A DNA stretch of 64,000 nt from Macrostomum lignano (Eukaryota), in the NCBI GenBank assembly GCA_002269645.1, contig NIVC01000092.1, forward strand, positions 434,001-498,000. The letters are read 5' to 3'. The notes under the pieces are model-generated. The model worked only from the letters and a program-made list of their open reading frames with translations, was not told where the DNA came from and did not search any database. The position numbers and the translations under genes were made by a program. Shown here piece by piece: positions 30,164 to 63,090 of the stretch. Numbering within the stretch: position 1 is the stretch's first letter; every line of letters starts with the position of its first letter.

Positions 30164-30359
30164 AGTTGAGAATTATTTTTCGATTACTTTCTTCACTCTC
30201 TTGTAGAGAAGTCGATAAAGCTTATTTTTACAGTTTAGGTGTTATTATTGGCAGATTTTTCTGCTTATCTTTCAACGTTTTCCGCTTTTTTATTTTTTAT
30301 TAATTTCAACTGTGCTTCGCATTGCTTAAATTGGCACTGAAATTTCGTTTCGTTTAAAA

Positions 30360-35458: not shown

Positions 35459-35731
35459 TGACTGACTGACTGACTGACTGACTGACTGACTGACTGACTG
35501 ACTGACTGACTGACTGACTGACTGACTGACTGACTGACTGACTGACTGACTGACTGACTGACTGACTGACTGACTGACTGACTGACTGACTGACTGACTG
35601 ACTGACTGACTGACTGACTGACTGACTGACTGACTGACTGACTGACTGACTGACTGACTGACTGACTGACTGACTGACTGACTGACTGACTGACTGACTG
35701 ACTGACTGACTGACTGACTGACTGACTGACT
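35459..35731. repeat. (GACT)n microsatellite
   Basis: Perfect tetranucleotide array. Confidence 0.99.
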
Positions 35732-36396
35732 TGTTGATTAAAGATCGAAGCTCAATACCATTTTAGTCTTTTATTAAACAGAAAAAATACCGAACTCATT
35801 TTGAAAAAGAGCACTTGGAACCAAACTGAGAAGAAATGATCAGATGGGATAGCTAAGTTAGGAATTAATGACTTTTTTAATTTTAGCTCGTAATGTTTTG
35901 GTGATTATTTTCTGTTGAAATTAAATTAAAATCCAAAGTCCTTAAAGAGCATATGATTTCGGAGGAAAGAATACAGAAAGAAAAAAATCAGAAAAAACGA
36001 AGTGGAGAGTATGGTACAAAAGGCAGCTCACTAAGCCACGTGCCATTAAACTGAAGTTCTATTTTAAAACTGTCAGGCTCTAAAATAGATCTCTATTTAG
36101 ACAATAGACTCCCAACATTTGGAAATTCCACGAGCTTCTTCATAAAAAATCGTACCTGCATCTGTGCATGGTTACGTACATACCGTATGTACATAATTTG
36201 TACATAGTATACGAGCGTAATTGCGTACATTACAGAATTTGATAAAAATAGGATAACTGTGAATGATCCAGTAAAGTAACTCGTACTAAAAATGAGTTCG
36301 TCTGTTTATTTAAGTACTAAAACTCATATTTACACGCGGCAATGAGAGCTTACGCAGGAATACAGAATTTCTCGCTTCGTCAAATACTTGTCAAGC

Positions 36397-36741
36397 ATGA
36401 TATTAAAATTGCTTCTTTGTTATTGCATACTGGCACTGACGCCGTATCTAAAGGTAAGAATGTTATTTAGAACCCATGACAGATTTCTACGTTGGTGGCC
36501 CTTGGCGAATTGGATACAATTCTGACGCATAGGCACAACTAGACACATTAATGGTCTGATTGACATGTATTCATTACCTTTTATTGCTCATTCCTGACCG
36601 GTCCGTCCGCCTTTCATCTGACCATAACAACAGACCAAAAGCCGCTTAATTCCAGTTTTTTATATTTTCAGCAATCAGAATAACACACACAAAATTTCGT
36701 CGCGCTTTACTGATAGCTGATGCGAGACCGAAGTGGACGAG
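36397..36741 (+). pseudogene. DSL-EGF relic F: signal-peptide exon 36397-36453 plus a 36-nt EGF scrap at 36706-36741
   Basis: MILKLLLCYCILALTPYLK|GTAAG resembles gene A exon 1. The EGF scrap matches 30/36 nt of gene A EGF1-2 and carries a CGA>TGA change. Confidence 0.55.
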
Positions 36742-37248
36742 AAGAGAGTCAAAAGGAGAGAGGAGAAAGAGAGGAGAGAGGAGAGCGAAGAGACTAGAGA
36801 TTAGATGGGATAAGTGACAGCGAGGGCAACTTCTGAATAAAAATAGCGAAAGTGTAAATCCTAATAACCGATTTTACTCACCTGAGCCACATTATACAAA
36901 ACAGCTATTTTTTGAAGAAACAATTTTCATTAGTTTCCTAATGTTAGCCGATGCGAATATTTATTCGTTACGCTTTACTTATTATTTAAATATCCAAGGT
37001 TTCTATTCAGAAGAGAATTATTGTTTATCCCAAGTTGCATTCGTAAAAATAGAATATGATGCTTAAAAAGCAAACCTTCTCTTTAATCTTTTTAGTTGGC
37101 TGTACGTATCCAAGTACTATGGACTCACTGCAGTCCTCGGCAGACTTTCTGTTTACTAATTTGATATACATATTTTTTGAAATTCTACAAATGCTTTTGT
37201 GCCCCCGAGTTGCAATAACAATGAACACTTGACAGGGTTCATTTACAG

Positions 37249-37416
37249 CAGGGTTTGGCAAACTTTGCCTCGCGGGCCCCATGCGACCCGCCAAGCCTCT
37301 CTATCCGGCCCTCGGGTCCTTTGAAAGGTTTGTGTCTCTTCTCATCTCTCTTCTCTGTAATCTTGTCTCTCCTCTTTGGCCCGCAGCCATTATGGTAAGA
37401 AGTTTGCCCACCCCAG
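37249..37416. mobile_element. Probable short hAT-type MITE
   Basis: Termini cagggtttggcaaac / gtttgcccaccccag; the TSD is imperfect. Confidence 0.5.
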
Positions 37417-37603
37417 ATTATACAGCCTGAGGACAATATATGTTTTATATTTAGACATGTTGCGCAATATTGTGCAATGTGTCTTGACGTACTTAGTTCC
37501 TTATTAATGTCTCACATCAATCAGTATTGCCGTGGATAATCCGTGGAATTTCCATTCACACTAGCGCCAAATAGGCGGCTGCTCAATTCGAAACAACCTC
37601 ACC

Positions 37604-38721
37604 ATGGCTTCTAAATTGCCTTTCGGCATTCTCAAATGCCTGTTGGCATTGACTTATTTCCTCAGTTAAGGGAATTCTGTAGTTAAGTGTGCTTAGCTAG
37701 CTAGGACCAAGCATACTTTAACTTGACTAGTCCGCTAGGGGCTGGAGCATGTTCCAGTGCTCCGTAGCAAGCTATATCCGAAACATGCTCCCAGTGTAAA
37801 CCAATGAAAACTGCGCATATGGGGTTGCAGCAAATTTATAATTGTTATAGTTGTAGCAAAATTATAATAGGCTATAAAGCCAATAATCAGTCCCCAACTC
37901 CCCTCTCCACATTAGGAATAGGACTAAGTAAATAAGGATAGGCCTAGGTTAGGCCTATTAATGTTTTATCAATGTCAGGAGAGACATGGAGCTGATCAGT
38001 CCGGCTCGGCATCACCGACAATCCATAACTCACTGGTTCACTTGCTACACGAATTTCTACGGACAGGATTGCAACACCTATTGTGTAGCTCAGAACGACG
38101 ATGTGAATGGTCATTATACCTGCGACTCGAATGGCAGAAGAGTGTGCATGATTGGTAAGAGCATCTGGTGATGGCTTGTTTTATTAAAGCAAGCAGTAAT
38201 ACAGAACGGAGTTCTTTACGTCTGTGTTGCAGGATTTACTGGCAGCTGTGCAATGAAGATATCGACGAGTGCTGATGTCACCTTGCTCTAATGAGAGCAC
38301 TTGTGTGAACACTATCGGAAACTTCACCTGTCAGTGTCGGTTGGGTCTCCGGCTGAGGCGCCCTTGAAACTGCCAGTAATAATCGTCTCCGCAGTCTTGG
38401 GAGCAGCGATTATCGCTGTTATAATTGCGCTTCTTGTTTATCAAAGAATGAACAGGTAAGTAAATACTGATTAAGGAAGTTGATTTCAGAAGTACTAATA
38501 AATACGGTGGTTACTATAGATTCAATTTATTGATTAAATGGCTGCAAAACACATTTTCAGTAGCAGATGCACTGCTGGCAACGACTATAATGAAAGCAGG
38601 TAAGAATGTGTCAGTTGTTGCATTCCGGAGTCTATAAGTTTGACCATTGCCTCTTCCATAAATGAATTTCAATTACAGATTCGATAACGAAGCATACGCA
38701 GCATTTACTGCTCTGAGTTGA
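37604..38721 (+). pseudogene. DSL-EGF paralog D: exon-1 relic 37604-37665, 5'-truncated DSL exon 37970-38154, collapsed EGF+TM exon 38233-38455, tail exons 38561-38599 and 38679-38721
   Basis: The DSL exon and following intron are nearly identical to gene A. The single EGF remnant has two 1-nt deletions and most EGFs are deleted. Confidence 0.82.
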
Positions 38722-39376
38722 ACACTTAACAGGACAGGAAATGTCCCTTGCCAATGTCCTCCGGAGTTTGAAGATATTTATTCATAAGATATATCAGAAA
38801 ATTTAATTAATTTCGGAGGATGCATGTGATACTCGTATTTTTCACATGCATGCCACGCCATGTACATATACTTGCTCCGAATCTTCTATGTAGATGCGCC
38901 ATGTAACAACATCATCATTTAAATATAGCTAACTGTACACGAGTATTAAGCACTGTTGCATTGTCCTGCAACTGCAAAAAATGCCATTTTCTGTTGTTTG
39001 GATTGAAACGATTTGGTCGCTTGTAATTATCATAAAGCAAATTTTAAATATGTAGCTCGTATTGCTGATATATTAAAAGTTCCACACTGCCTTCTTGTCG
39101 CTCGTACCAGATTTTTAACAGAGGTGCTTTAAATAACTCACTAGACTAGAGCATCAAAAATTTGAAATTTTTTTTCAAACTTTGACTTGAGTCTAATAAT
39201 TAAGGTTATATATATGTATAGCATTTTTTATTCAGTTGAATATTTCATCGTACGCGAATGTCTAGCTCTATTTAACTATTATACATATCCACATTTCAAT
39301 GTTGCATTTGTTACACCGACTCCTAATTCATATTACTCATAAATATAATGCGGAGGTTGTGGGTTCTGGCTAAGTA

Positions 39377-39665
39377 GGGGGTTGTGACCTAGTGGGTAGA
39401 GCGTCGGACTCACGGCTGAAAGGTCGGGGGTTCGATTCTCGACCCACACGGAACAATTTGTGTCCTTGAGAAAGACACTTAACCCTGCATTGCTTCAGTT
39501 CACACAGCCGTAAAATTGGTGCCACCATTGGCTGGGGTAATTGAGGGTAGATATCGTATGTGGGTGGCGACCCCCCCCCCCCAGTCTTTGAAATGAACAG
39601 CCGTACGCAGCCTTCAGATGCGCTGCGCAATAGCTGCGACTGAGCTGTCGGTTGCACATCTGCCT
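39377..39665 (+). mobile_element. tRNA-derived SINE, copy 3 (most complete)
   Basis: A-box-like cctagtgggtagagc, B-box ggttcgattc, then tgtgtccttgagaaagacacttaaccc (CORE-like). Confidence 0.85.
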
Positions 39666-40420
39666 ATTCGGGCGGGTGTCATCAATTGCTAGTTATTATT
39701 ATGCATTTGGGTCCGTAGTTATAGTTTTTTAATTGTGGATTAACTCTACATTCTAGTTATAAAATAATTATCAGGATGCAATATAGGAGAGTAAAGTACA
39801 TAGATTTGCATTATTTGCAGCTGCTGTTCGTGAGTTCCGCGTTGTAATCAATCACAAATTTACGTACCTAGCTAATTTTAATTAGCAGCAGACGACTCAA
39901 TAAACAACTAAATATATCCGTTGGATTTAAATTAACCAGACTTCAATTTATTTTCTCACAAGTTCGGAATTAAGGAAACTGATCTGTAGCGATTAAATTG
40001 TATCAATAAAGGTTTCTAACCAATAAATCACGAGAATTCAGAACGGTAATTGCATGTATGCTCAAGATACTACAATGTACTAGGATAAAGGTGGTCTGAC
40101 GCATCCATTGCATCCATGATCAACGTTGTGATTAACTTGTACGTTAGAAATTTGGGAAGTTATTAATTTATCATGGTTCGATTAGCTATACAGAAAAATA
40201 AAGCAAATTTTTAATACTATAATATTTAGATGGATAAGTGTGCCAATTTATAGCAAAATACGTTTTCACATGATATACAAAGTGGGTTGCATTTACAGGG
40301 ATGCTTATTAATACTGGAATAAGTTGAGAATATGCCAGGAGAGTCTCGAGTTCAGAAAAAAGTCGCAATTGGTCAAAAACCTGAGATCAGATGTAGCCTT
40401 CTCTGAGGCAGCTGGCGACA

Positions 40421-43394
40421 TCAATACCTCATCGGTTTGAATGTAGAATCGCTGTCAATGTAAAAGGTGACGCTTCTGAGTCGACAAATTACCTTCGATT
40501 ACTAAATGAAAGAAATCAATGCTTACTCCGTATTGTATGTATGATTGTCCACCATATCCGGCTCGACTGTACTGCCTCGACGTGACCTGCTAATTACGAT
40601 GTTAAGAAAGTTAGGTTTATCTGTTTACGGCCTTAAAGAATGTTAACAGAATGTTCAGTGTTAATACCTGACTGCCTGTGAAATACGTTCGCTGTTCGTG
40701 ATGCCGACGACAGTCAGTATGACCGCTACGATCAGAATGACACCACCGACAGTTGCTAAGGCAATGATGAGGGTCTGCTGATTCGGCTCCGCAGGTTTCT
40801 CTGCTGTCTCGCAAAGTCGTCCGCTGAATCCATCGGGACACTGGCATCTGTAGCTGCCGAATTCGTTCACGCAGGTGCTGCCGCTCGCACAGTCGGACCT
40901 GCCCTCGCACTCGTCTACATCGATCTCGCATCGGCTACCTGTTAATCCCACGGCACAGATGCAGTTGAATCCGCCGAAGGTGTTCAGGCAGGTGCCGCCG
41001 ATGCCGCAAGGTGAGGCCGATATCTTGCACTCGTCAGCGTCTGCCTCGCAGCGACTGCCGGTAAAGTTTCCTGGACAGAGACAACTGAACCCGCCGAATG
41101 TGTTTTGACAAGTGCCTCCGTTCAGGCACAGCGAAGTCCCATTCTCACACTCATTCACATCTGCCTCACAGCGGGCGCCTGTGAAGTTTGACGGACAACT
41201 GCAGTTGAATCCGCCGATGGTGTTCAGACAGGTGCCTCCATTCTGACACGGGAAAGTGCCTGAAGCACACTCGTTCACGTCGGAGCCGCAGAGGCTGCCA
41301 GTAAAGCCCGAAGGACAGCTACAGTTGAATCCGCCAAAGGTGTTAATACAGGTACCTCCGTTCAGACAGAGTGAAGTTCCGGTGTCGCACTCGTTCACGT
41401 CAGTCTCACAAAGACTGCCATTAAAGTTAGGGGGACAACTGCAGTTGAATCCACCGAGGGTGTTCAGACAGGTGCCTCCATTCTGACACGGGAAAGTGCC
41501 TGAAGCACACTCGTTCACGTCGGAGCCGCAGAGGCTGCCAGTAAAGCCCGAAGGACAGCTACAGTTGAATCTGCCAAAGGTGTTAATACAGGTACCTCCG
41601 TTCAGACAGAGTGAAGTTCCGGTGTCGCACTCGTTCACGTCAGTCTCACAAAGACTGCCATTAAAGTTAGGGGGACAACTGCAGTTGAATCCGCCAAAAG
41701 TGTTGATGCAGGTGCCATTGTTCTGGCACGGTGGAATGTCTAGAGCGCATTCGTTCAAATCCTCACAACGACTGCCAGTAGAGTTTTCCGGGCAGACACA
41801 ATCGAATCCTCCATAGGTGTTTAGGCACGTTCCTCCATTCGAGCAGGTCGGCAGATCAAGTTCGCATTCGTTGACATCCGTCTCGCAGCGGCTTCCGTTG
41901 AAGTTTGGCGTGCAGGTGCAGTTGGCAATGTTGCCGACATTGGAACAGGTGCCTCCGTTGTAGCACGGGCTTTCGAGACACGGAATCAGTCGGGTGCAGT
42001 TGGTGCCCATCCAGCCTGTAAACGTATTACAAGTAAAAATGCAAACATTTCAGCAGCAGTCAACAAACTAAAAGACACATATTAGTAGTGACCTCGAAGC
42101 TCACCTGACATGCAAACTTTGTTGCCATTAGAATCGCAGGTATAGTGGCCTGTAGAGTCATTGCGAGGCTTGCAAAGTGTGTTACAGTCCAGTCCGTAGT
42201 AATGGCTGTGGCAGGTGTACCAATAGGTAATTGATAGCCTGTGGTGCCTCGGAGAACTGTAGATGTCCATGTTTCTCCTTACTGAGTCAGCCCGAGCCGG
42301 TAGACTTGCGTAGAAATGGTCCATATGGTCGTCGTAAAATTCGTCTTTGTCCATCGCGACAACCGTTATTTGTATGCTGCCCTGTTAATGTTAAAAATGT
42401 AAAGATGCGGCGTTCTGGTCACAGATATATTGTACTGCAGTTAGCTATACAAACTAAAAGTACAAAGATTGCATACCGGATTCCAGTAGGGCATGTCTAT
42501 AACCACTGGATTGGCAATTTCACCGAACCTGCCGCCGAAGTTGACAATGTCCAAATCCCCATAGTATCCAGCTTGACCGTAGTTAAATAGATTGTTCCTT
42601 TGGGGAAGAATTTCAATTGGCAATCGTTAACTCAAGGTAAATTCAATAACTCTCCCCCTTGAGCCAGTGAAATCCTAATAAATTCTTCACGGAAATCCCT
42701 AGGGAATGCCTTAGGAATGCCTTGGGAATCTCAGCATTCTACATTTATCGATGGCATCTCAGCAATTCCAAGTCTTTTTTCAAGTCTTAGCAACCCCCCC
42801 CCCCAAAAAAAATGAGCTATATAATCTCAGCAAACTATCGAGGCACAGCTAAATTTTTCCAATCCACATTTATTAAACAAAGCATCCCATCATATTTAAT
42901 TTATAGTGCTTGTTGGTTTAGTTGCCAAAAACAAATTCAAACAGGGTCTTTTTAACATTACACCGATGGATGGATGGTTAGCACGTCTGTCGGATTGCTG
43001 TAGGGAGCAAAAGCACAAGCAGAACTTATTAATCTACCGTGAACATCTCTTTCTAAAGGCCCTCGTCAGCAGCAATAATTTACCCTCCAGCGTTGGTCCT
43101 GTCAGCAAAGAGTTGGAATTTCGGATCGCAGGCTGACTCTCTCCAGGAAAAGAAGGTGTCGCAGTACGTCCCGTCCGAGGCTCTGCTGTCATGATTATAG
43201 TAGGTGTGGAATTGTACACGCATGTACCCCGTACCGCCGACCTGTAGCAGATTGCGATTAAGGAAAGGAAATATTGAAATAGAAATTTTTGCCACACTTT
43301 TTGTTTGCAAAATAATTTGCGAGTAACTTACTGTTCCACACAAATGAACGATTAAAAGAGCGACCGTCGATGAGATTGAAGTTAAACGGCACAT
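40421..43394 (-). CDS. DSL-EGF gene E (10 EGF, TM, ~690 aa). Exons 43332-43394, 43084-43241, 42477-42597, 42105-42381, 40668-42015, 40527-40586, last exon 40421-40451/40475
   Basis: Signal exon of 63 nt and a 121-nt exon as in A; [46 protein letters not shown]; phases consistent. The last exon boundary is uncertain. Confidence 0.88.
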
Positions 43395-43894
43395 TTTGTT
43401 AAACTTGAGGAATTTTTTTTCAAACAGAGCCTTACGAGCCTTACTGTTTTATAGCCAATACTAGGACACATTCACTGGTACCTTTGTGTGCTTGTAGGGG
43501 GTCCACTTTAGCTCAGGTGCTATCTAGTGTATATTTTTAAGAAGCTTGTTTATCTACAAAATCTATTTATTTGGACTTTACCATCAACGAGTAGATGCAG
43601 TAAATCTATTTATGGATATGCAGCATCAACTATATCAGCTTAACTGGACACTTTTTGATGAGTTTGAACAAGAAAAGAAAAAACATCCTTGTGCCTTGCG
43701 TTTTTATTGCACAGAGATGCGTTTTTATTGTCGATTGCATATATAGAATAAATTGACTGTTACCTAGTGCAAACTGTGCACCAGCTGACTTGTGCAACAT
43801 TCTGTAAACATTGAATACAATTGAAAAGGTACCTGTGCATCTGAACTTGTTTTCATGTAGCATGTAGTCTAAAATTTTCCATCTTAGAAGATAA

Positions 43895-46390
43895 GAGATG
43901 CTCAGTGAGAGATGCTCAGTGAGAGATGCTCAGTGAGAGATGTTCAGTGAGAGATGCTCAGTGAGAGATGTTCAGTGAGAGATGCTCAGTGAGAGATGCT
44001 CAGTGAGAGATGCTCAGTGAGAGATGCTCAGTGAGAGATGCTCAGTGAGAGATGCTCAGTGAGAGATGCTCAGTGAGAGATGCTCAGTGAGAGATGCTCA
44101 GTGAGAGATGCTTAGTGAGAGATGCTCAGTGAGAGATACTCAGTGAGAGATGCTCAGTGAGAGATGCTCAGTGAGAGATGCTCAGTGAGAGATGCTCAGT
44201 GAGAGATGCTCAGTGAGAGATGCTCAGTGAGAGATGCTCAGTGAGAGATGCTCAGTGAGAGATGCTCAGTGAGAGATGCTCAGTGAGAGATGCTCAGTGA
44301 GAGATGCTAAGTGAGAGATGCTCAGTGAGAGATGCTCAGTGAGAGATGCTCAGTGAGAGATGCTCAGAATGAGATGATCAGTGAGAGATGTTCAGTGAGA
44401 GATGCTTAATGAGAGATGCTCAGTGAGAGATGCTCAGTGAGAGATGCTCAGTGAGAGATGCTCAGAGTGAGATGATCAGTGAGAGATGTTCAGTGAGAGA
44501 TGCTTAATGAGAGATGCTCAGTGAGAGATGCTCAGTGAGAGATGCTCAGTGAGAGATGCTCAGTGAGAGATGCTCAGTGAGAGATGCTCAGTGAGAGATG
44601 CTCAGTGAGAGATGCTCAGTGAGAGATGCTCAGTGAGAGATGCTAAGTGAGAGATGCTCAGTGAGAGATGCTCAGTGAGAGATGCTCAGTGAGAGATGCT
44701 TAGTGAGAGATGCTCAGTGAGAGATGCTCAGTGAGAGATGCTCAGTGAGAGATGCTCAGTGAGAGATGCTCAGTGAGAGATGCTCAGTGAGAGATGCTCA
44801 GTGAGAGATGCTCAGTGAGAGATGCTCAGTGAGAGATGCTCAGTGAGAAATGCTCAGTGAGAGATGCTCAGTGAGAGATGCTCAGTGAGAGATGCTCAGT
44901 GAGAGATGCTCAGTGAGAGATGCTCAGTGAGAGATGCTAAGTGAGAGATGCTCAGTGAGAGATGCTCAGTGAGAGATGCTCAGTGAGAGATGCTCAGTGA
45001 GAGATGCTCAGTGAGAGATGTTCAGTGAGAGATGCTTAATGAGAGATGCTCAGTGAGAGATGCTCAGTGAGAGATGCTCAGTGAGAGATGCTCAGAGTGA
45101 GATGATCAGTGAGAGATGTTCAGTGAGAGATGCTTAATGAGAGATGCTCAGTGAGAGATGCTCAGTGAGAGATGCTCAGTGAGAGATGCTCAGTGAGAGA
45201 TGCTCAGTGAGAGATGCTCAGTGAGAGATGCTCAGTGAGAGATGCTCAGTGAGAGATGCTCAGTGAGAGATGCTCAGTGAGAGATGCTAAGTGAGAGATG
45301 CTCAGTGAGAGATGCTCAGTGAGAGATGCTCAGTGAGAGATGCTCAGAGTGAGATGATCAGTGAGAGATGTTCAGTGAGAGATGCTTAATGAGAGATGCT
45401 CAGTGAGAGATGCTCAGTGAGAGATGCTCAGTGAGAGATGCTCAGAGTGAGATGATCAGTGAGAGATGTTCAGTGAGAGATGCTTAATGAGAGATGCTCA
45501 GTGAGAGATGCTCAGTGAGAGATGCTCAGTGAGAGATGCTCAGTGAGAGATGCTCAGTGAGAGATGCTCAGTGAGAGATGCTCAGTGAGAGATGCTCAGT
45601 GAGAGATGCTCAGTGAGAGATGCTCAGTGAGAGATGCTCAGTGAGAGATGCTCAGTGAGAGATGCTCAGTGAGAGATGCTCAGTGAGAGATGCTCAGTGA
45701 GAGATGCTCAGTGAGAGATGCTCAGTGAGAGATGCTTAGTGAGAGATGCTCAGTGAGAGATGCTCAGTGAGAGATGCTCAGTGAGAGATGCTCAGTGAGA
45801 GATGCTCAGTGAGAGATGCTCAGTGAGAGATGCTCAGTGAGAGATGCTCAGTGAGAGATGCTCAGTGAGAGATGCTTAGTGAGAGATGCTCAGTGAGAGA
45901 TGCTCAGTGAGAGATGCTCAGTGAGAGATGTTCAGTGAGAGATGCTCAGTGAGAGATGCTCAGTTAGAGATGCTAAGTGAGAGATGCTCAGTGAGAGATG
46001 CTCAGTGAGAGATGCTCAGTGAGAGATGCTCAGAGTGAGATGATCAGTGAGAGATGTTCAGTGAGAGATGCTTAATGAGAGATGCTCAGTGAGAGATGCT
46101 CAGTGAGAGATGCTCAGTGAGAGATGCTCAGAGTGAGATGATCAGTGAGAGATGTTCAGTGAGAGATGCTTAATTAGAGATGCTCAGTGAGAGATGCTCA
46201 GTGAGAGATGCTCAGTGAGAGATGCTCAGTGAGAGATGCTCAGTGAGAGATGCTCAGTGAGAGATGCTCAGTGAGAGATGCTCAGTGAGAGATGCTCAGT
46301 GAGAGATGCTTAATGAGAGATGCTCAGTGAGAGATGTTCAGTGAGAGATGCTTAATTGGAGATGCTCAGTGACGGACGCTCAGTGAGAGA
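43895..46390. repeat. 14-bp satellite (gagatgctcagtga), ~2.5 kb, with a recurrent variant cassette
   Basis: Seen directly. Confidence 0.98.
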
Positions 46391-46419
46391 TGACCCGGGG
46401 CAGATGAGAGTGGAAAGGA

Positions 46420-47080
46420 GCAGGAAAAGAAAATGAGAGATGAGAGAAGAGAGGAGACGTGGGAGATGGGAGATGGGAAGAGAAAAGACAAGTGAGAAGA
46501 GAATGAAGGAGAAAATGGAAGAAGAGAAAGAGGGGAGAGAGGAGATAAGAAATAAGATAGTGGAGAGAGAAGAGGGGAGAAAAGAGAGGGAAGAGAGAAG
46601 AGAGGAGAGAAGAGGAGGAGAAGAGGGAGAGAAGAGGGGAGAGGACAGGAGAAAAGAGGGGGAGAAAAGGGGAGAGAAGAGGAGGAGAAGAGGGGAGAGA
46701 AGAGGGGAGAGAAGAGAAGGAGAAGAGGGGAGAGAAGAGGGGAGAGAAGAGGAGGAGAAGAGGGGAGAGAAGAGGGGAGAAGAGGGAAGAGAAGAGGGGA
46801 GAGAAGAGGGGAGAGAAGAGGAGGAGAAGAGGGGAGAGAAGAGGAGGAGAAAAGGGGAGAGAAGAGGGGAGAAGAGGGAAGAGAAGAGGGGAGAGAAGAG
46901 GGGAGAGAAGAGGGGAGAAGAGGGAAGAGAAGAGGGGAGAGAAGAGGGGGAGAAAAGGGGAGAGAAGAGGGGAGAGAAGAGGAGGAGAAGAGGAGGAGAA
47001 GAGGGGAGAGAAGAGGGGAGAGAAGAGGGGAGAGGAAAGAGGGAGAGAAGAGAGGAGAAATGAGAAGAGAGAAGAGGGAA
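46420..47080. repeat. Purine-rich (gagaagaggg)n repeat
   Basis: Seen directly. Confidence 0.93.
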
Positions 47081-47411
47081 GAGCTTTTCAGCTTTTAGCT
47101 GCCGAGCTCTCTTTATTCCTAGTTCAGAAAGTGCAAGTGTGAACCTGTTGGGCTCAGCAAGTTTGCCGCTGTAGAAAGCAAAGGCTGTCACCAACTGCTG
47201 TCGGAGTTGTGGAACACTGGACGGGATGTGTCGATGAACGTCAGCATGGCTCTTAAGCGGAAGAGCGAATTGGATATGAGCTATTGCAATGTCCACACCT
47301 GACGGCAACGACTGCTATGAATGGACAGAAAGAGTAACAGTCGCTCAGCATGCTTACCGGTTGTTCATTGCAAGGCTGCAATAATAACTTCACAAAAGCC
47401 CATATATACTG

Positions 47412-48794: not shown

Positions 48795-49250
48795 AAAGAG
48801 AGGGAGAAGGGGGGAGAGAAAAGGGGAGAGAAGAGCGGGAGAAGAGAAGAGAGAAGAGGGGAGAGAAGAGGGGAGAGAAGAGAAGAGAGAAGAGGGGAGA
48901 GAAGAGGGGAGACGAGGGGAGAGAAGAGCGGAAGAAGAGGGGAGAGGAAAGAGGGAGAGAAGAGAGGAGAGAAGAGGGGGGAGAAGAGAAGAGAGAAGAG
49001 GGGAGAGAAGAGGGGAGAAGAGAGGAGAGGAAAGAGGGAGAGAAGAGAAGAGAGTTGAGGGGGAGAAGAGGGCAGAAGAGAGGAGAGGAAAGAGGGAGAG
49101 AAGAGAAGAGAGAAGAGGGGGGAGAAGAGGGGAGAAGAGAGGAGAGGAAAGAGGGAGAGAAGAGAAGAGAGAAGAGGGGAGAGAAGAGGGGAGAAGAGAG
49201 GAGAGGAAAGAGGGAGAGAAGAGAAGAGAGAAGAGGGGGGAGAAGAACCC
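48795..49250. repeat. Purine-rich simple repeat
   Basis: Seen directly. Confidence 0.92.
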
Positions 49251-49527: not shown

Positions 49528-51376
49528 TTTTAGTGAGCAGTTGATTGACAGGAATTGGAGCAGATATGCAAGCTTAAAGAATTGGAGAAGCGCAGCTCAC
49601 ATCAGAGCGGAAAAAGCAGCCACCTCTACTCGTCCCGACCGCAGCCACCCAAGCAGCCCAGCTCCAGACCAGCCGGCCTCAATGCCCAAAAAGGACAATA
49701 ACGAAGCTGAAGTTTGAGGGCCGAGCTAGCAGCATGCGAACGCGTGGCACAGAAGAGACTCGCAGCAAATGCTTTGGGGAGGGGGTTCAAAGCATCCATT
49801 GCTTTGCATTGTGCCTCACACTCACAATAGGGCTTTTAGAGGCCATTGTGTTTAAAAGTCTTTCTGTCATGTAAGCAGAAGATAATAGGAAAATGAAACC
49901 TTGTTATACTGCTGTTGAGAATTGAAGGATTCTATAGTCCCAGATAGAATAGATATAAAATATATAGAGCCCTCAGATTTCGCATTTTGCTGCCGCTTCG
50001 GCGACACTAAGCTCTCTTGCGTAGCCTCTCTGCAATAATATTTTACACAAGCCAAACTTATTTTCATTCTCTTCTGGATGAGACTGGGTGAGAGAGTAAA
50101 AAAGAAGGTAGAAGGCGCGAGAGAGAACCAGGCTTAATGAGAGAATCGATCGACTCAAGATTAAAATTTCGATTATTGAAATTGGCTGTTAATGGCCACG
50201 CCCAGATCCTGAGCACCTACAAGTGCACCATACTGGACCCAAGCCCAAATGCATAGGGTGTACATGCCTGTCGATTAGAAAGTTCAGGGCACCCTGTGTG
50301 AGCGTGTGTATGAGTGAGTGCCTGCTTACAGTATTGAGATGTTTGCATGTGCTCAGGAGTCAACGGAATGGGCAGAATCGCCGTCAGCGCTGGCTGAGGC
50401 ACGATGTCGCAGAAGGCGTTGCGCCCGGGTGCGTGCAGCCCTCGTGCGAATATTTATTAACTTAAGAGTCTGCAGATGCATTTCATCATCTCTAATTTTG
50501 ATGGGTAACGCGTTTTATAGAAACCCCAGCTTCTTAAATTTGTCCTGTAGACACTGCATCTAAAGAAGAGCAGCTGCAGGATTATCGCGCTGCGAGTGCT
50601 AAGAGAAAACTGCTTTGAGTTCGCCAACAAACCCAACACTGGTCTCTTGAATCACCCAACCGCGCGCTGTGCCTCAGAGACAATAAAACCGTGAGTCTGG
50701 CTAGATTGAAACTCTAATCCAGCTCACTACTCAAACAGCATTCAAAGCATTCAATCAAACAGCAAGACCGAGCACAGCATTGTTCATTGTCCCCGGCAAC
50801 CGCAGAGGCTGCTCAACGCTCGCCTGTAGACTGCAGAAAGGCTGGCAGAACGAAGTGCAGGCCTGAGAATAGCAATAATTAGCTACTGCTTGAGGTTGAG
50901 CCGGCCTCTCTAAACACGCTCCCTACGGCGAGTTCAGCACATTTTTTTTTCTTTGGCAAAGCAAACAGTAATTAAACCATTCTATCACATTACTAAATAG
51001 ACGAACTCAAACAATGCACTATTTCAATAAATCCGGGCAAAAGGCATTGCTTGACAACTAATTCAACTACAATGACTGCTATTGTTATTTATTATTTAAA
51101 TTCTTAATAAAAAACTGAAAGTAAAATAGGCTTATGAGCTAAAGCTCTCGGAGATTTCGACTTTGTCAGTATATTGAAAATCGTATTGAATAGCTGATAT
51201 CCTGCACTCCTAGTCATTCTTCGATAGACTTGAGAGCAAATTTTGGTAAATGATTTTGTTTACCTGTAGTGCACTCTGGGCATTCGTGTTAATTCTCGGC
51301 ACTTAAAAATCAAGTACAAAAATTTAAGATAAAAAAAAATAAATTACCTGCTCGCAAGTAAGAGAACTTTCGTTTT

Positions 51377-54300
51377 TTACACAAAATTACTGTGGTTATT
51401 TGCTTGATATTTTCGAAGTCTCGTCATCAGCCAATCGAGAAGATTTGCTCTCTTCATCTCCAGCTTCTTAAATATTTCCAGAAACTGCTCCGGACTCGAA
51501 GAATAAAAAACGGCAACCAGCAGCTCCTGCTCATCTGAGTCCTCTCTCTCAACCACATCCCGGATCCAGTCCTGAGCGCGAGCTTCTCGATCAGTCCGCA
51601 GCTCGAGCCGCAGAGCCCACAGCAGAGCGTCAAAATTAATGTAGAAATAGTTACTGCCTGACAACCGGAGGGGAAAGCACGTCCTCAGAGCTCCTGCCAA
51701 GAATTCGAGTTTCGGTCGCTGGTCAAACCGATAGCAGAACTTCCACGCTGAGTCGCGGCTCCTCAGATGCCGCATCACGAACTCCTCAGTCGCTTCAGTC
51801 GCCGACTTCTCACGAGACCAAGCGATGCCTCTGCTCACCGAGTGACTTGAGCACAAGCTCACGACTCTCTCTGCAGTTCCTCGTTCGCCGAACTTCAGAC
51901 AAGCCAGCGCTCTAAGAGCCTCCCGTGCTGAGAGGGCGCAGTCTGGCAGCCTGGCAATCAGCTTTGTGAGCGACTCCTGAGATCGCGGGCTGCAGTCACT
52001 GCAAGAGAGACGCACCAGACACTCTCTCACCACGTCGTAGATCTGATAGTACTCGAGAGCACTGGACTTCGTCAGGGGCAGCGGACTCATATTCGGCAGG
52101 ATTTGGAACGGGTGGAAGTAGAATGTGCCTGAGTCGCTCACAGGTCTGAGACTGCCGATGAACTGCTGCAGCAGTTGGGGCAGCTGATCGATTACTGTTC
52201 TCAGTTTGCTCATGATGCCGTCCGAATGCTGCTCCACTCTCTCCTTGTCCGCACCCTTGAGGTAGATGGCCGCATCGCTGAGAAAGAAATGATCCATGAT
52301 GCGACCCCGAGATCGGTCAGGTGTGTCAGGTGTTTGTCTGTCCTGCTCTCGGCTCTTCTCCACACAGTCGAGCAGCATCTGCAGCGACTGTCTCGTGAGA
52401 CTCACGAGGTTCTCCTTCTTCCACTGCTCGACCGGCGTCTCGTCCACCATTCGGAAGGTGATGGTCTTCACGTGGTAGGACTTCAAGCCTTGCTGATTGA
52501 AGCCATCCTTGTCACAGATGACCTTCTTGACCAGGTACTTGAGTGTGACGAACAGCTGACCTTGCAGGGTAGAGAGACTTCGCAGCATCCGGTTCTCCAG
52601 AAAGCTGGTGCTCACGCGGAGCTCTTCGCCTTCCCTGTCTGGAGAGGCTGCGTGCACCACGTGGCAGGGCGATGAGGCAGAGGTGAGCACCTTCCGGAGG
52701 GCCTCTAAGACGGGATGGGGGATGTTGGAGACGCGGTTTGGCAGCAGCGGCGCGATGGGCGGGTAGCGGCAGAGACGGCATGCGGAGACATTGTCCAGTG
52801 CTGGCCTCAGTGTGAATCCGGGTGTTGCAAAAGCAGGATTGGAGGCTGTAAAAACGAATCGGTTACAAATACATTTAATACACCGTTTTTTTATGGCCAT
52901 GTCCATCGTCTACGTGAGATGAGACATGGCCATAGACTATGGAATTTAATACATGATTATATCGTGTTACAATGGTCGGTTGGCAATTATGGTATGAGCG
53001 TAGTGTGCTTCGCCACTCATAAAAATTAATCATTGTCTACCTACATATTGACATATTGTCTCATGAATGTATTTATAGTAGCCTTAAATAATGACTTCGA
53101 AGCGTTGAATAATGAGCGTACAGCATGGGACCATGCATATAGCGATAATTTCTTCACCAATGCTTTGCACACAGAAAGAAAACGTCTACACTGCCAGAAT
53201 CTCTCGAAATCACAACAGAACTAACAGAACACTCCCCAAAAGAGAACTCACCGAATCCTGAGCACTGAATGTGCCCGTTCACCAACTCATGCTGCTCCGG
53301 AGCTCCATCGCACTCGCACAGGCCTCTCTGGTGGTATTCTCGACCGGGAATCAACTGCATCACATCAATGTCGGAATTGGGGTCAGTTCTGCCGTCCAGT
53401 GTCGTCAGGCTGTTGCCCCAGCCTTCTGAGTAGCTGCCGACGACAAAAAATAAGTCATCATTGTTTGGTCCACTTCTTATAATCTGCTGCAGGGCATCAG
53501 CAGCTGCGCTCTGCAATGCGGCTCGGGATTCGGTGAAGCCTGACTGCTCCAGTGCTGAGTGCAGCTGCTCGCTCAGCTCTGATTCGATCAGACTGCATCT
53601 TAAATGTCAGTTGTTTTGTAAAAACATGCACTTTTAGAAGGGTTAATTGACTTATTTATGTAGCTTAGGGTAGCACTCCAGCAACAGTGCATGAACTGAT
53701 TGTAAGCAGTTTGTCCACAATGCTGTACGATAGCTAACGCAAAATTCTCTGAATTATGTGAGTAGTTTGAAAAGAAAGGGTTGACGCAGGGATGAAAATT
53801 TTAGATTCAGAGCCCTGGAGGTGCGGCAGGCCGGAGGTGGGTGCATAGGGTGAGCGTCAGCATTTTGCAAGCTTTCACATTCCACTATTCGCATACTGCT
53901 CCTACTTTTAAATTGCCTCTTTCAATTAAAACACGTAAAAAACTAAACGAAAAAAGTTACGAGTCGTAGCAAGAATCAAGCCAAAAATAAAAAGAAAAAA
54001 TCTCATGATTTAAACTCACCGAAATTCTGATTCCTTCGATGGTTCTTCCAAAACAGATGTTTTTTCAGCTACCCCCTGACTAGCAATTTGTTGAAGATTG
54101 ACGTCAGCTAGTGCTTTGATAAGTAAGCTTACAACTTGGTGGTGACCATTCTGTGATGCAATGTAGAGAGGTGAAAAACCATGAACATTTACTGGAAGAT
54201 TGACGTCAGCTTGTGCTTTGATGAGTGAGCTCACAACTTGGTGGTAACCAAACTTTGATGCAACGTAGAGAGGGGACTCGCCACTGTTTCGTTGAAGGTT

Positions 54301-56961
54301 GACGTCAGCTTGTGCTTTGATGAGTGAGCTCACAACCTGGTGGTGACCATTCTGTGATGCAATGTAAAGAGGTGAAGAGCCATGAACATTTTCTTGAAGA
54401 TTGATGTCAGCTTGTGCTTTGATGAGTGAGCTCACAACCTGGTGGTGACCATTCTGTGATGCAATCCAGAGAGATGAAGAGCCATGAAGATTTTGTTGAA
54501 GATTGACGTCAGCTTGTGCTTTGATGAGTGAACTAACAACTTGGTGGTGACCTTTACATGATGCCATGTAGAGAGGTGACTCGCCAGTGTTTCGTTGAAA
54601 ATTGACGTCAGCTTGCGCTTTGATGAGTGAGCTCACAACTTGGTGTTGGCCATTCTGTGATGCAGCGTTGAGAGGTGAGTCGCCAGTGTTTCGTTGAAGA
54701 TTGACGTCAGCTTGTGCTTTAATAAGTATGCTTACAACTTGGTGTTGACCATTCTGTGATGCCATGTAGAGAGGTGAAGAGCCATGAACATTTTCTTGAA
54801 GATTAACGTCTGCTCGGGCTTTGATAAGCGTGCTCATAACTTGGTGGTGACCATTCTGTGATGCAATGTAGAGAGGTGACTCGCCAGTGTTTCGTTGAAG
54901 ATTGACATCAGCTTGTGCTTTGATGAGTAAGCTCACAACTTGGTGGTGACCAAAATGTGATGCAATGTAGAGAGGTGACTCGCCATGAACATTTTCTTGA
55001 AGATTGACGTCAGCTTGTGCTTTGATGAGTGAGCTCACAATCTGGTGGTGACCATTATGTGATGCAATGTAGAGAGGTGAAGAGCCATGAAGATTTTGTT
55101 GAAGATCGACGTGAGCTTGTGCTTTGATGAGTGAGCTTACAACTTGGTAGTGACCATTCTGTGATGCAATCCAGAGAGGTGAAGAACCACAAACATTTTC
55201 TTGAAGGTTGACGTCGGCTTGTGCTTCGATGAGTGAGCTCACAACCTGGTGGTGACTATTCTGTGATGCAATATAGAGAGGTGAAGAGGCATGAACGTTT
55301 TGAAGATTGACGTCAGCTTGTGCTCTGATGAGTGAGCTCACAACTTGGTGGTGACCAAAATGTGATGCAATGTAGAGAGGTGACTCGCCAGTGTTTCGTT
55401 TAAGATTGACGTCAGCTTGTGCTTTGATAAGTGTGCTCACAACTTGGTGGTGACCATTCTGTGATGCAATGTAGAGAGGTGACTCGCCAGTGTTTACTTG
55501 AAGATTGACGTAGGCTTGTGCTTTGATGAGTGAGCTCACAAATTGGTATTGGCCATTATGTGATGCCATGTAGAGAGGTGAGCAGCCATCGACTTCTTGA
55601 AGATTGACGTCAGCTTGTGCTTTGATAAGTGTGCTCACAACTTGGTGGTGACCATTCTGTGATGCAATGTAGAGAGGTGACTCGCCAGAGTTTTCTTGAA
55701 GATTGACGTCAGCTTGTGCTTTGATGAGTAAGCTCACAACTTGGTGATGACCATTTTGTGATGCAATGTAGAGAGGTGAAGAGCCATGAACATTTTCTTG
55801 AAGATTGACGTCAGCTTGTGCTTTGATGAGTGCGCGTACAACTTGGTGGTGACCAAAATGTGATGCAACGTAGAGAGGTGACTCGCCAGTGTTTCGTTGA
55901 AAATTGACGTCAACTTGTGCTTCGATGAGTGAGCTTACAACTTGATGGTGACCATTTTGTGATGCAATGTAGAGAGGTGAAGAGCCATGAACATTTTCTT
56001 GAAGATTGACGTCAGCTTGTGCTTTGATGAGTGAGCTCACAACTTGGTGGTGACCATTTTGTGATGCAATGTAGAGAGGTGAAGAGCCATGAACATTTTC
56101 TTGAAGATTTACGTCAGCTTGTGCTTTTATGAGTAAGCTCACAACCTGGTGGTGACCATACTGTGATGCAGTATATAGAGGTGACTCGCCAGTGTTTCTT
56201 TGAAGATTGACGTCAGCTTGTGCTTTGATGAGTGCGCGTATAACTTGGTGACCATTCTGTGATGCAATGTAGAGAGGTGACTCGCCAGTGTTTCGTTGAA
56301 GATTGACGTCAACTTGTGCTTCGATGAGTAAGCTCACAACTTGATGGTGACCATTTTGTGATGCAATGTAGAGAGGTGAAGAGCCATGAACATTTTCTTG
56401 AAGATTGACGTCGGCTTGTGCTTTGATGAGTGAGCTCACAACTTGGTGGTGACCATTTTGTGATGCCATGTAGAGAGGTGAGCAGCCATCGACTTCTTGA
56501 AGATTGACGTCAGCTTGTGCTTTGATGAGTGAGCTCACAACCTGGTGGTGACCATACTGTGATGCAGTATATAGAGGTGACTCGCCAGTGTTTCGTTGAA
56601 GATTGACGTCAGCTTGTGCTTTGATGAGTGCGCGTACAACTTGGTGGTGACCAAAATGTGATGCAATGTAGAGAGGTGACTCGCCAGTGTTTTGTTGAAG
56701 ATTGACGTCAGCTCGGGTTTGAATGAACAATTTGACAATTTTGACTTTGCCCATTTCACATGCAAAGTGAAGCGGTGAGAATGTCATCTCATTGATGCTG
56801 AACAGCCTATTAACGTTAGAAGGATTCTGTAGGTATCGCAAATTTTTTCTTGTGTTTCCGAACCGAATGTCTCTCAGGATCTCCGGTTCAGTTTCATCAA
56901 GGCCGAAGTTCTGCATCAAAACTGCTGCAATCGCTGTTAAGATTCTCCAAAGAGCTTCCAT
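51377..56961 (-). CDS. Ankyrin-repeat / Mab-21 (cGAS-like receptor, cGLR) fusion protein, ~1583 aa. Exons 54020-56961, 53252-53592, 51377-52845
   Basis: Exon 1 holds 27 ANK repeats and ends TTT CG|GTGAGT. Exon 2 starts after ctgac...atgcag|T CTG ATC (phase 2 matches), encodes GSYSEG...SDID and ends TTC G|GTGAG. Exon 3 starts ttacag|CC TCC (phase 1 matches) and encodes LDNVSA, CHVV..LRVSTSFLE..LKY...LKSYHVKT...W...DHFF. Confidence 0.85.
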
Positions 56962-62133: not shown

Positions 62134-63090
62134 AAAGTAGCAGTTGACCCAAATGAAGGTCCCATAGGCCAAGTAGCAGTTGACCCAAATGAGGGACCTG
62201 TAGTTCAGGTAGCAGTTGACTCAAATGAAGGACATGTAGGTCAGGTAGCAGTTGACCCAAATGAAGAATATGCAAGTCAGGTAGCAGTTGACCCAAATGA
62301 AGGACCTGTAGGTCAGGTAGCAGTTAACCCAAATGAAGGTCCTGTAGGTCAGGTAGCAGTTGACCCAAATGAAGAATATGCAAGTCAGGTAGCAGTTGAC
62401 CCAAATGAAGGACCTGTAGGTTAAGTAGCAGTTGACCTAAATGAAGGACCTGTAGGTCAGGTAGCAGTTAACCCAAATGAAGGTCCTGTAGGTCAGGTAG
62501 CAGTTGACCCAAATGAAGGAGTTGTAGGTCAGGTAGCAGTTGACCCAAATGAAGGAGTTGTAGGTCAGGTAGCAGTTGACCCAAATGAAGGAACTGTATG
62601 TCAGGTAGCAGTTGACCCAAATGAAGGACCTGAAGGTTAAGTAGCAGTTGACCTAAATGAAGAACCTGTAGGTCAGGTAGCAGTTAACCCAAATGAAGGT
62701 CCTGTAGGTCAGGTAGCAGTTGACCCAAATGAAGGCGTTGTAGGTCAGGTAGCAGTTGACCCAAATGAAGGACCTGTAGACCGTCAGGTAGCAGTTGACC
62801 CAAATGAAGGAACTGTATGTCAGGTAGCAGTTGACCCAAATGAAGGAACTGTATGTCAGATAGCAGTTGACCCAAATGAAGGACCTGTAGACCGTCAGGT
62901 AGCAATGACCCAAATAAAGGACCTATAGGTCAGGTAGCAGGTAACCCAAATGAAGGAACTGTATGTCAGGTAGCAGTTGACCCAAATGAAGGAACTGTAG
63001 ACCTTCAGGTAGCAATTGACCCAAATAAAGGACCTATAGGTCAGGTAGCAGTTAACCCAAATGAAGGAGTTGTAGTTCAAGTCGCAGTGC
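62134..63090. repeat. 36-bp minisatellite (ggtcaggtagcagttgacccaaatgaaggacctgta)
   Basis: About 26 tandem units, seen directly. Confidence 0.95.

What the first reader, a model, noticed from the sequence alone, without database searches (positions are those of the whole stretch)
51377..56961. Hidden spliced fusion: 27 ankyrin repeats joined to an apparently active cGAS-like (cGLR/Mab-21) nucleotidyltransferase
Seen: three separate ORFs in the track join through two GT-AG introns with exact phase agreement (CG|T and G|CC) into one ~1583-aa reading frame. The enzyme half keeps GS..EG, the DID pair and a third Asp (LDNVSA), plus the Mab-21 lobe motifs and a long helical C-terminal extension. Known: cGAS/cGLR enzymes use GS plus three acidic residues to make cyclic dinucleotide messengers when activated. 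Inference: this is a pattern-recognition receptor in which a large repeat solenoid serves as the sensing or autoinhibitory module, in place of direct nucleic-acid sensing. I cannot tell whether this architecture is already catalogued.
Basis: partly seen in the sequence, partly recalled or inferred. Interest (0 to 1): 0.92.

Follow-up and report, generated by a model that had tools for sequence, protein, structure and literature searches.

The report
Flatworm ankyrin-repeat cGAS-like receptor gene
This is a real three-exon gene of the flatworm Macrostomum lignano that joins 27 ankyrin repeats to a cGAS-like enzyme with an intact-looking active site, but it belongs to a large flatworm family whose ankyrin-enzyme design was already catalogued in 2023, and nobody yet knows what these proteins sense or make.

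Summary
On the minus strand, three ORFs join through two GTGAGT…AG introns into one open frame of 1583 aa. It is 1585 aa if an equally in-frame acceptor 6 nt upstream is used, which close homologs favour.

The product has a short hydrophobic N-terminus, 27 ankyrin repeats and a linker. These are followed by a divergent cGLR/Mab-21 nucleotidyltransferase and a ~277-aa C-terminal domain with no recognisable fold relative.

The G-S, D-I-D and third-Asp columns are invariant or nearly so in 15 relatives down to 35% identity. They align with the catalytic motifs of mollusc cGLRs.

The window is Macrostomum lignano. The gene is one of dozens of paralogous ANK–cGLR genes there, several supported by RNA-seq-derived models.

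Li et al. 2023 already list ANK–cGLR fusions, including these flatworm proteins. They purified five relatives without the ANK array, and none is among their 15 named active enzymes.

The receptor reading, with ANK as sensor or autoinhibitor, is plausible but untested. Product, ligand and downstream receptor are unknown.

Verdict: a new, mis-annotated member of a known kind, of moderate interest.

The parts
54020..56961 (-). Exon 1: start codon (56961-56959), N-terminal segment of 55 aa whose first ~20 residues are hydrophobic, 27 ankyrin repeats, acidic linker ending ...EEPSKESEF + CG of a split Arg codon
   Evidence: The N-terminus resembles the annotated N-termini of full-length paralogs P0009, P0021 and P0056. 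An in-frame stop lies 21 codons upstream of the ATG.
54082..56796 (-). Ankyrin array: 27 repeats, alternating 33- and 34-aa units (201-nt super-repeat)
   Evidence: Pfam Ank_2 E = 5e-81. Repeat table. TRF 54087-56713, period 99 x 26.2 and 201 x 13.1, 83% matches. Variation is concentrated in the hairpin and helix-1 columns. Framework dN/dS is 0.23.
53593..54019 (-). Intron 1 (GTGAGT...GCAG, 427 nt). The alternative acceptor at 53599|53598 makes it 421 nt. The stop of the unspliced ANK ORF (TGA 54018-54016) lies inside the donor GGTGAGT.
53252..53592 (-). Exon 2: N-lobe of the nucleotidyltransferase. G52-S53 = 53438-53433; D74-I-D76 = 53372-53364. May start at 53598 (adds Cys-Ser).
   Evidence: There is no in-frame ATG before residue 78, and an SL-donated AUG is out of frame.
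52846..53251 (-). Intron 2 (GTGAGT...TTTTTACAG, 406 nt), phase 1 (G|CC)
   Evidence: The position is conserved in L001, L002 and L003.
52211..52845 (-). Exon 3, first part: rest of the cGLR core. Third catalytic Asp D131 = 52795-52793. The Mab-21_C (PF20266) match is at 52546-52352. Also carries the ...M-x-HFF... motif equivalent to cGLR 'CPNYF'.
   Evidence: Pfam 25.4 bits against a cut-off of 24.1. Profile against PDB: 8gjy cGLR1 E = 1.6e-7, mouse cGAS E = 4.7e-7. hhalign against mollusc cGLRs: 99.4%, E = 2.4e-21.
51377..52210 (-). Exon 3, second part: family-specific C-terminal domain (~277 aa, mostly helical with a small sheet) and stop codon TAA (51379-51377)
   Evidence: AF2 pLDDT 80.6, pTM 0.77. 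No PDB fold match, best E = 0.9. No Pfam match. Conserved in all paralogs.

Best explanation
The region is a single protein-coding gene of Macrostomum lignano. It is one paralog of a large, apparently macrostomid-specific family of ankyrin-repeat cGAS-like receptors (ANK-cGLRs).

Shown:
- Three exons splice into a product of 1583 or 1585 aa.
- The product consists of a hydrophobic N-terminus, 27 ANK repeats, a linker, a divergent Pol-beta/Mab-21 nucleotidyltransferase with G-S, D-x-D and a third Asp, the Mab-21 C-lobe, and a private C-terminal domain.
- The catalytic columns are conserved across the family.
- The ANK framework is under purifying selection, while the canonical binding-surface positions vary.

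Inferred:
- The enzyme is catalytically competent and makes a nucleotide second messenger.
- The ANK solenoid, probably together with the C-terminal domain, binds a protein or other non-nucleic-acid ligand, or holds the enzyme off until that ligand is engaged.
- Paralog and repeat diversification supplies different specificities.

The product, the ligand and the downstream receptor are unknown.
For: Gene structure:
- Only the cis-spliced mRNA can encode a complete active site. The first in-frame Met of the enzyme frame is residue 78, after G52-S53 and D74-I-D76. The M. lignano spliced leader's AUG (PMC8629364) is out of frame at both acceptors.

Family:
- Every named hit in three homology searches and the cluster look-up is M. 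lignano; the one exception is an unnamed metagenome fragment, P0207. Many hits carry Ank plus Mab-21_C.
- The BOX15_Mlig models derive from an RNA-seq-guided transcriptome with boundaries cut at trans-splice and poly(A) sites (PMC5730564). They include fusions of 871-1575 aa.

Enzyme:
- PF20266 matches above its cut-off.
- The family profile hits solved cGLR1 8gjy (E = 1.6e-7) and cGAS.
- hhalign gives 99.4% against mollusc cGLRs and puts D131 on their third-Asp strand.
- The N-lobe aligns GS..EG..SDxDxM with the mollusc motif (E = 1e-4).
- G52, S53, D74 and D76 are invariant, and D131 is present in 14 of 15 sequences down to 35% identity.
- The AF2 secondary structure puts the residues just before G-S (48-51), the D-I-D motif and D131 on strands (48-51, 74-79, 129-134).
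- The top Foldseek hits are cGAS, MAB21L1, MB21D2 and MiD49.

ANK as the recognition module:
- Variation is confined to the hairpin and helix-1 columns.
- dN/dS is 0.23 in the framework and about 1.5 in the variable columns.
- The core has an acidic pI of 5.6, the lowest in the family. By Li et al.'s pI argument this speaks against nucleic-acid binding.
Against: - There is no transcript evidence for this particular locus.
- The Pfam Mab-21 N-terminal model (PF03281) does not match.
- The N-lobe profile alignment is only 57% probability.
- The AF2 model of the NTase core has low confidence, pLDDT 40-55, so active-site geometry could not be checked.
- Li et al. purified five M. lignano relatives (NTase plus C-terminal domain, no ANK). 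None is among their 15 named active enzymes, although only nucleic-acid ligands were offered.
- Other flatworms lack cGAS and STING. I could not test whether M. lignano has a STING or another receptor.
- The dN/dS contrast uses columns chosen because they vary.
- One paralog (P0022) has His at the third Asp.
Confidence: 0.6

Rival explanations
1. The Mab-21 half is a catalytically silent scaffold, like MAB21L1 or MiD49/51. The protein is then an ANK-based adaptor with no second-messenger output.
For: - No activity is reported for five purified relatives.
- PF03281 is not matched.
- A 10-residue family-specific insertion sits between G-S and D-x-D.
- MAB21L1 and MiD49 are among the Foldseek hits.
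- STING is absent from other flatworms.
Against: - G-S, D-x-D and the third Asp are invariant or nearly so across paralogs down to 35% identity, while most other columns have diverged. That is not expected if catalysis were lost.
- Li et al. say Mab21L1/2/3 lack a predicted functional active site (legend of their Figure 1A), yet they placed M. lignano relatives of this family in their cGLR domain table and biochemical screen.
Confidence: 0.2
2. The enzyme is a conventional nucleic-acid-activated cGLR. The ANK array only localises or oligomerises it, or recruits partners, and is not the sensor.
For: - All cGLR ligands identified so far are dsDNA or dsRNA (PMC9980059).
- Most family cores have a basic pI of 7-9.
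- A conserved hydrophobic N-terminus hints at membrane targeting.
Against: - This gene's core is acidic (pI 5.6).
- Relatives offered dsDNA or dsRNA were not among the named active enzymes.
- ANK variation maps to the binding surface.
Confidence: 0.15
3. These are two separate products: an ANK-only protein ending at its own stop (54016), and an independently transcribed or SL trans-spliced Mab-21 protein.
For: - The unspliced ORF ends at a TGA inside the donor, so intron retention would give a 981-aa ANK-only protein.
It has no ANK within 8 kb upstream.
- 30-39% of M. lignano genes are trans-spliced.
Against: - Exon 2 has no in-frame ATG before the G-S and D-x-D motifs, and the SL AUG is out of frame at both acceptors.
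- The homolog models P0002, P0035 and P0013 cross the same junction.
- Transcript-derived paralog models are fusions.
Confidence: 0.05

Closest known systems
Macrostomum lignano ANK-cGLR paralogs, e.g. PAA93879.1 (BOX15_Mlig007069g1, 1575 aa), PAA61028.1 (1146 aa), P0006, P0009, P0015, P0021
   Same: They share the domain order: hydrophobic N-terminus, ANK array, linker, NTase with GS..EGWGN..SDIDV and a third Asp, Mab-21_C, and the same private C-terminal domain. They also share the position of the second intron. Identity in the enzyme half is 45-86%.
   Different: - This copy has an unusually long and uniform ANK array: 27 repeats with 83% mean nucleotide identity.
- Its core has the most acidic pI in the set.
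- No intact model of it exists in the protein collection. Its locus model, A0A1I8HSG3, is truncated and merged with a Delta-like gene.
ANK-cGLR fusions catalogued by Li et al. 2023 (PMC9980059), e.g. in the coral Stylophora pistillata
   Same: A cGLR nucleotidyltransferase core fused to ankyrin repeats and proposed to mediate protein or ligand interaction.
   Different: The coral proteins belong to other cGLR clades. I did not compare them directly. Nothing is known about the function of either group.
Characterised cGLRs: human and mouse cGAS, Drosophila cGLR1, oyster and coral cGLR1 (PDB 8gjy)
   Same: The Mab-21 C-lobe is homologous (E = 1.6e-7 to 4.7e-7), and the catalytic G-S / D-x-D / D pattern is shared.
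   Different: - Those enzymes are single-domain proteins activated directly by dsDNA or dsRNA.
- Here the N-lobe is highly divergent. It has a shorter D-x-D to Asp spacing (55 residues), a 10-residue insertion after G-S..EG, and conserved His/Cys columns.
- The flatworm protein also has an ANK array and an extra C-terminal domain.
Catalytically inactive Mab-21 proteins (MAB21L1, MiD49/MiD51)
   Same: The fold family is the same by Foldseek.
   Different: Li et al. state that Mab21L1/2/3 lack a predicted functional active site; for MiD49/51 I did not check the catalytic residues here. The flatworm family keeps the G-S, D-x-D and third-Asp columns.
Fungal and other STAND/NLR-type receptors with highly internally conserved ANK, TPR or WD repeats (recalled from memory, not tested here)
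   Same: A long array of near-identical repeats, with variation focused on binding-surface positions, attached to a signalling domain.
   Different: The signalling module here is a nucleotidyltransferase, not an NTPase switch. Repeat-number polymorphism has not been examined.

Membership tests
cGLR / Mab-21 nucleotidyltransferases | Mab-21 C-terminal helical lobe (PF20266) | tested here: met
   Pfam 25.4 bits against a cut-off of 24.1. The family profile hits 8gjy cGLR1 at E = 1.6e-7 and mouse cGAS at E = 4.7e-7. hhalign gives 99.4% against mollusc cGLRs.
cGLR / Mab-21 nucleotidyltransferases | Pol-beta NTase motif G-S ... [DE]-x-[DE] on the N-lobe | tested here: met
   G52, S53, D74 and D76 are invariant in 15 family sequences. 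They align with mollusc GS-x-SEG...SDMDMM, but only at E = 1e-4 and 57% probability. The S53-D74 spacing is 20 residues, longer than usual.
cGLR / Mab-21 nucleotidyltransferases | Third catalytic acidic residue on a later beta-strand | tested here: met
   D131 is present in 14 of 15 sequences. hhalign aligns it with the Asp of mollusc 'EIDIAFSF'. A strand is predicted at 129-134.
cGLR / Mab-21 nucleotidyltransferases | Match to the Pfam Mab-21 N-terminal/core model (PF03281) | tested here: not met
   No hit at E <= 1 on the enzyme half, or at E <= 10 on the N-lobe alone. The N-lobe is too divergent for that model.
cGLR / Mab-21 nucleotidyltransferases | Bilobal cGAS-like fold with the three acidic residues converging on the active site | tested here: inconclusive
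   The top Foldseek hits are cGAS 5vdq (E = 6.5e-3, prob 1.0, TM 0.45), MAB21L1 and MB21D2.
cGLR / Mab-21 nucleotidyltransferases | Synthesis of a cyclic di- or oligonucleotide on ligand binding | not testable with these tools
   Five relatives were purified by Li et al. without the ANK array. None is named among their 15 active enzymes.
cGLR-STING pathway | A STING or other cyclic-nucleotide receptor in the same genome | not testable with these tools
Planarians and schistosomes lack STING. M. lignano is not in Li et al. Table S5.
Ankyrin-repeat proteins | Tandem 33-residue ANK repeats | tested here: met
   Ank_2 E = 5e-81 and Ank E = 3e-75 on the first 400 aa. 27 units were listed.
M. lignano ANK-cGLR family as catalogued in Li et al. 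2023 | Same signature and architecture as the catalogued accessions (PAA86972, PAA45980, PAA57558, PAA93208, PAA68676) | tested here: met
   These accessions align over the whole core at 35-39% identity with the same invariant columns. Ank_2 hits on PAA86972, PAA45980 and PAA68676 (and other M. lignano PAA entries) are listed in their Table S2.

The most novel reading that the evidence does not exclude
The flatworm ANK-cGLRs may be a lineage-specific, rapidly diversifying receptor repertoire.

- Long arrays of near-identical ankyrin repeats would generate new binding specificities for non-nucleic-acid, probably protein, ligands. They would do so by unequal recombination and by substitutions focused on the binding surface.
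- Ligand binding would switch on a cGAS-like enzyme.
- The enzyme's second messenger would act through a receptor other than canonical STING, possibly involving the private C-terminal domain of unknown fold.

This would be a repeat-based, NLR-like recognition logic coupled to nucleotide signalling, in a phylum otherwise thought to have lost the pathway.
Probability: 0.2. Interest if true: 0.75.

Novelty: new member of a known kind. Interest (0 to 1): 0.4.

Why it matters
cGLRs are a major but mostly uncharacterised family of animal innate immune sensors, and for most of them the ligand is unknown. ANK-cGLR fusions are the clearest candidates for sensors of something other than nucleic acid, yet none has been characterised.

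M. lignano is a transgenic, RNAi-amenable laboratory flatworm. It stands out in a phylum where planarians and schistosomes lack cGAS and STING. Its dozens of ANK-cGLR genes therefore offer a tractable system for three questions: what a repeat-coupled cGLR senses, what it makes, and what reads the signal.

For genome annotation, this locus shows that the current public model is wrong. It lacks the ANK exon and the G-S/D-x-D part of exon 2, and it is merged with a Delta-like neighbour.

Tried and rejected
1. My first family alignment (A1) kept the ANK columns. This was a planning error. That search could not show whether distant relatives exist outside Macrostomum, although it did reveal further long M. 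lignano fusions.
2. A single-sequence search against PDB found cGAS only at E ~0.02, over 65 residues.
3. Pfam on the isolated N-lobe gave only a non-significant poly(A)-polymerase palm hint (E = 0.23). The C-terminal domain gave nothing.
4. Foldseek of the confidently modelled C-terminal domain found no significant structural relative. The best E was 0.9, with generic TPR-like helical proteins.
5. A bacterial promoter/terminator scan is meaningless for this eukaryotic gene and is disregarded.
6. I considered an SL trans-spliced, stand-alone enzyme and rejected it on reading-frame grounds.
7. I looked for a second family member in the window and found none.
8. I could not test for STING in M. 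lignano.
9. The metagenome relative L003 has its own ATG. It also has an upstream acceptor in the same phase as window intron 1, so it does not show whether ANK-less forms exist.


Full report
**Observation**

Reading the sequence and joining the exons by script gives the following:
- exon 1: 56961-54020
- intron 1: GTGAGT...GCAG, 427 nt
- exon 2: 53592-53252
- intron 2: GTGAGT...TTTTTACAG, 406 nt
- exon 3: 52845-51377

The split codons are CG|T (Arg) and G|CC (Ala). The product is 1583 aa with no internal stop. Reading through either intron meets stops within about 20 codons. The stop of the unspliced ANK ORF lies inside the donor GGTGAGT.

A second acceptor 6 nt upstream (TTTAAG|ATGCAG|TCTG) is also in frame and adds Cys-Ser, giving 1585 aa. 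The close homolog models P0002, P0035, P0036 and P0039 carry exactly these residues, and the L001 paralogs use the equivalent upstream site. The acceptor therefore remains ambiguous, with homology favouring the upstream one. The start codon is supported by an in-frame stop 21 codons upstream and by similarity of the first ~20 residues to the annotated N-termini of full-length paralogs.

**Source organism and family**

Every named protein found with the enzyme half is from the flatworm Macrostomum lignano. So are all hits of an ANK-free family profile, and all eight long fusion representatives I looked up. The only exception in any search is one unnamed metagenome fragment, P0207.

The window itself is M. 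lignano. The public model A0A1I8HSG3 (P0112) matches window 43289-40488 and 30811-28942 at 99.6-100%, and matches the last exon of this gene at 93%. That model is chimeric. It begins at the Met just after D-I-D, so it lacks the ANK exon and the G-S and D-x-D motifs, and it runs on into a neighbouring Delta-like gene.

Many family members carry Ank plus Mab-21_C in one protein. These include models of 871 to 1575 aa from the NIVC01 annotation. That annotation was derived from a genome-guided RNA-seq transcriptome, with gene boundaries cut at trans-splice and poly(A) sites (PMC5730564). The fusion is thus transcript-supported in paralogs, though not directly for this locus.

Paralogous loci show the same exon layout and the same second-intron position (L001, L002 and the metagenome contig L003). 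The closest NIVC01 paralog, P0001, is a 5'-partial model with no ANK array within 8 kb upstream. A near-identical model from the other annotation (P0035) does include an ANK end and a linker.

**Could the enzyme half be expressed alone?**

Exon 2 has no in-frame ATG before residue 78 of the enzyme half. That is after G52-S53 and D74-I-D76. The M. lignano spliced leader ends in ATG (PMC8629364), but that ATG is out of frame at both candidate acceptors and gives peptides of 32-34 aa. Only the cis-spliced fusion encodes a complete active site. An ANK-only isoform produced by intron retention remains possible.

**The enzyme half**

- Pfam recognises only the Mab-21 C-terminal lobe, just above threshold: PF20266, 25.4 against 24.1 bits. 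The Mab-21 core model PF03281 does not match.
- An ANK-free profile of 15 family sequences hits the solved invertebrate cGLR1 8gjy (E = 1.6e-7) and mouse cGAS (E = 4.7e-7). The match runs through the C-lobe only.
- A profile-profile comparison with seven mollusc cGLRs from Li et al.'s screen gives 99.4% probability (E = 2.4e-21). The alignment starts exactly at A-L-D131-N-V-S-A, opposite the mollusc E-I-D-I-A-F-S-F strand.
- The N-lobe aligned separately puts GSYSEG...SDIDVM on GSKSEG...SDMDMM, with a family-specific 10-residue insertion. Support is modest: E = 1e-4, 57% probability.
- In the 15-sequence alignment, which reaches down to 35% identity, G52, S53, D74 and D76 are invariant and D131 is present in 14. 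P0022 has His there.
- The AF2 model of the enzyme half has a poorly resolved core (pLDDT 40-55). Its predicted strands cover residues 48-51 just before G-S, the D-I-D motif (74-79) and D131 (129-134). Its only meaningful Foldseek hits are cGAS, MAB21L1, MB21D2 and MiD49.

Active-site geometry could not be checked.

**The ANK array**

There are 27 repeats, in alternating 33- and 34-aa units. TRF reports period 99 x 26.2 and a 201-nt super-repeat x 13.1. Mean nucleotide identity between units is 83%.

Variable positions lie in the beta-hairpin/loop and on helix 1. From general knowledge of ankyrin repeats, these form the canonical binding surface. The framework is almost invariant. A Nei-Gojobori estimate gives dN/dS of 0.23 for framework columns and about 1.5 for the variable columns. 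The second figure is inflated because I chose those columns for their variability. The array is clearly a maintained coding sequence, and its pattern fits a binding module.

**The C-terminal domain**

The last ~277 residues are conserved in all paralogs. They fold confidently in AF2 (pLDDT 80.6, pTM 0.77). They have no Pfam match and no significant PDB fold match (best E = 0.9). The function of this domain is unknown.

**Comparison with the literature**

Li et al. 2023 (PMC9980059) report that 87% of cGLRs are single-domain and that some carry TPR or ankyrin modules, and they describe coral ANK-cGLRs. Their domain table lists Ank_2 on M. lignano accessions of this family. Their biochemical screen included five M. 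lignano constructs (#89-93) without the ANK array. The 'active enzyme' field is empty for all five. They also note that most platyhelminths have no cGLR other than Mab21-like proteins. Planarians and schistosomes lack both cGAS and STING. The architecture is therefore catalogued, but its function is uncharacterised.

**Mechanism**

The best-supported reading is an ANK-coupled cGLR whose enzyme is competent, with a conserved catalytic triad. The ANK array, and perhaps the C-terminal domain, would provide recognition or autoinhibition. The acidic core of this copy (pI 5.6, the lowest of the family) argues weakly against direct nucleic-acid binding.

The rivals are:
- an inactive scaffold;
- a conventional nucleic-acid sensor with ANK serving only for localisation;
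- two separate products.

The first two cannot be excluded without biochemistry. The third is unlikely on reading-frame and homology grounds.

**Verdict**

This is a new, mis-annotated member of a known, catalogued kind. Interest is moderate, because the family is biologically unexplored and sits in a tractable model animal.

Noticed in passing
window 24700-43300, both strands: A cluster of Delta-like/EGF-repeat genes. The tblastn hits of P0112 fall at 24725-26747 (+), 28942-30811 (-), 31867-34344 (+), 37971-38156 (+) and 40488-43289 (-). The public model A0A1I8HSG3 wrongly merges this cGLR gene's last exon with these genes.
   Followed up: partly
window 53333-53269 (exon 2) and 52771-52661 (exon 3), minus strand: Family-conserved His/Cys columns lie between and just after the catalytic motifs: H87, C92, C94, H107, C139, C174 and H175 of the enzyme half. 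H87, C139 and H175 are invariant in 15 sequences. This could be a structural zinc site that differs in position from the cGAS zinc thumb.
   Followed up: no
window 56961-56902, minus strand: The hydrophobic N-terminus MEALWRILTAIAAVLMQNFG is shared in character with paralog N-termini (P0009 MGFLQRLFSAVAACCL..., P0021, P0056). It may be a membrane anchor or lipidation segment.
   Followed up: no
window 51380-52210, minus strand: The C-terminal ~277-aa domain is modelled confidently (pLDDT 80.6). It has no Pfam match and no PDB fold relative. It appears to be a private domain of the flatworm family.
   Followed up: yes
L001 (NIVC01001606.1) 6001-25445: This locus holds two tandem ANK-cGLR gene copies plus a partial third on the other strand. 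The annotated 871-aa model P0009 seems stitched from exon 1 of one copy and later exons of the other.
   Followed up: partly
L002 (NIVC01001460.1) 1-8000: The closest NIVC01 paralog, P0001 (86% aa, 88-90% nt), has no ANK array within 8 kb upstream. DNA homology to the window begins only 109 nt before the exon-2 acceptor. It may be a truncated duplicate, or it may have a very long intron.
   Followed up: partly
L003 (JGI metagenome 3300040801, contig Ga0450804_4230032): An environmental relative at 40-58% identity has the same two-exon enzyme half and the same C-terminal domain. An acceptor just upstream of its ATG is in the same phase as window intron 1. The family therefore exists beyond the M. 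lignano reference genome.
   Followed up: partly
window 20592-23779, 43894-47083, 48796-49246: Long purine-rich micro- and minisatellites cause the strong GC skew seen in the composition profile. Examples are a 14-mer x 178 at 43894-46392 and an 11-mer x 173 at 20592-22559. Other arrays lie at 6-687, 9416-9942, 13143-13947, 18012-18979 and 62137-63088.
   Followed up: no
window 49583-49786 and L002 12307-12507, 14067-14268: A ~200-nt element downstream of the gene is shared with L002 at 88-89% identity, in opposite relative orientation, and is present twice in L002. It is probably a dispersed repeat.
   Followed up: no
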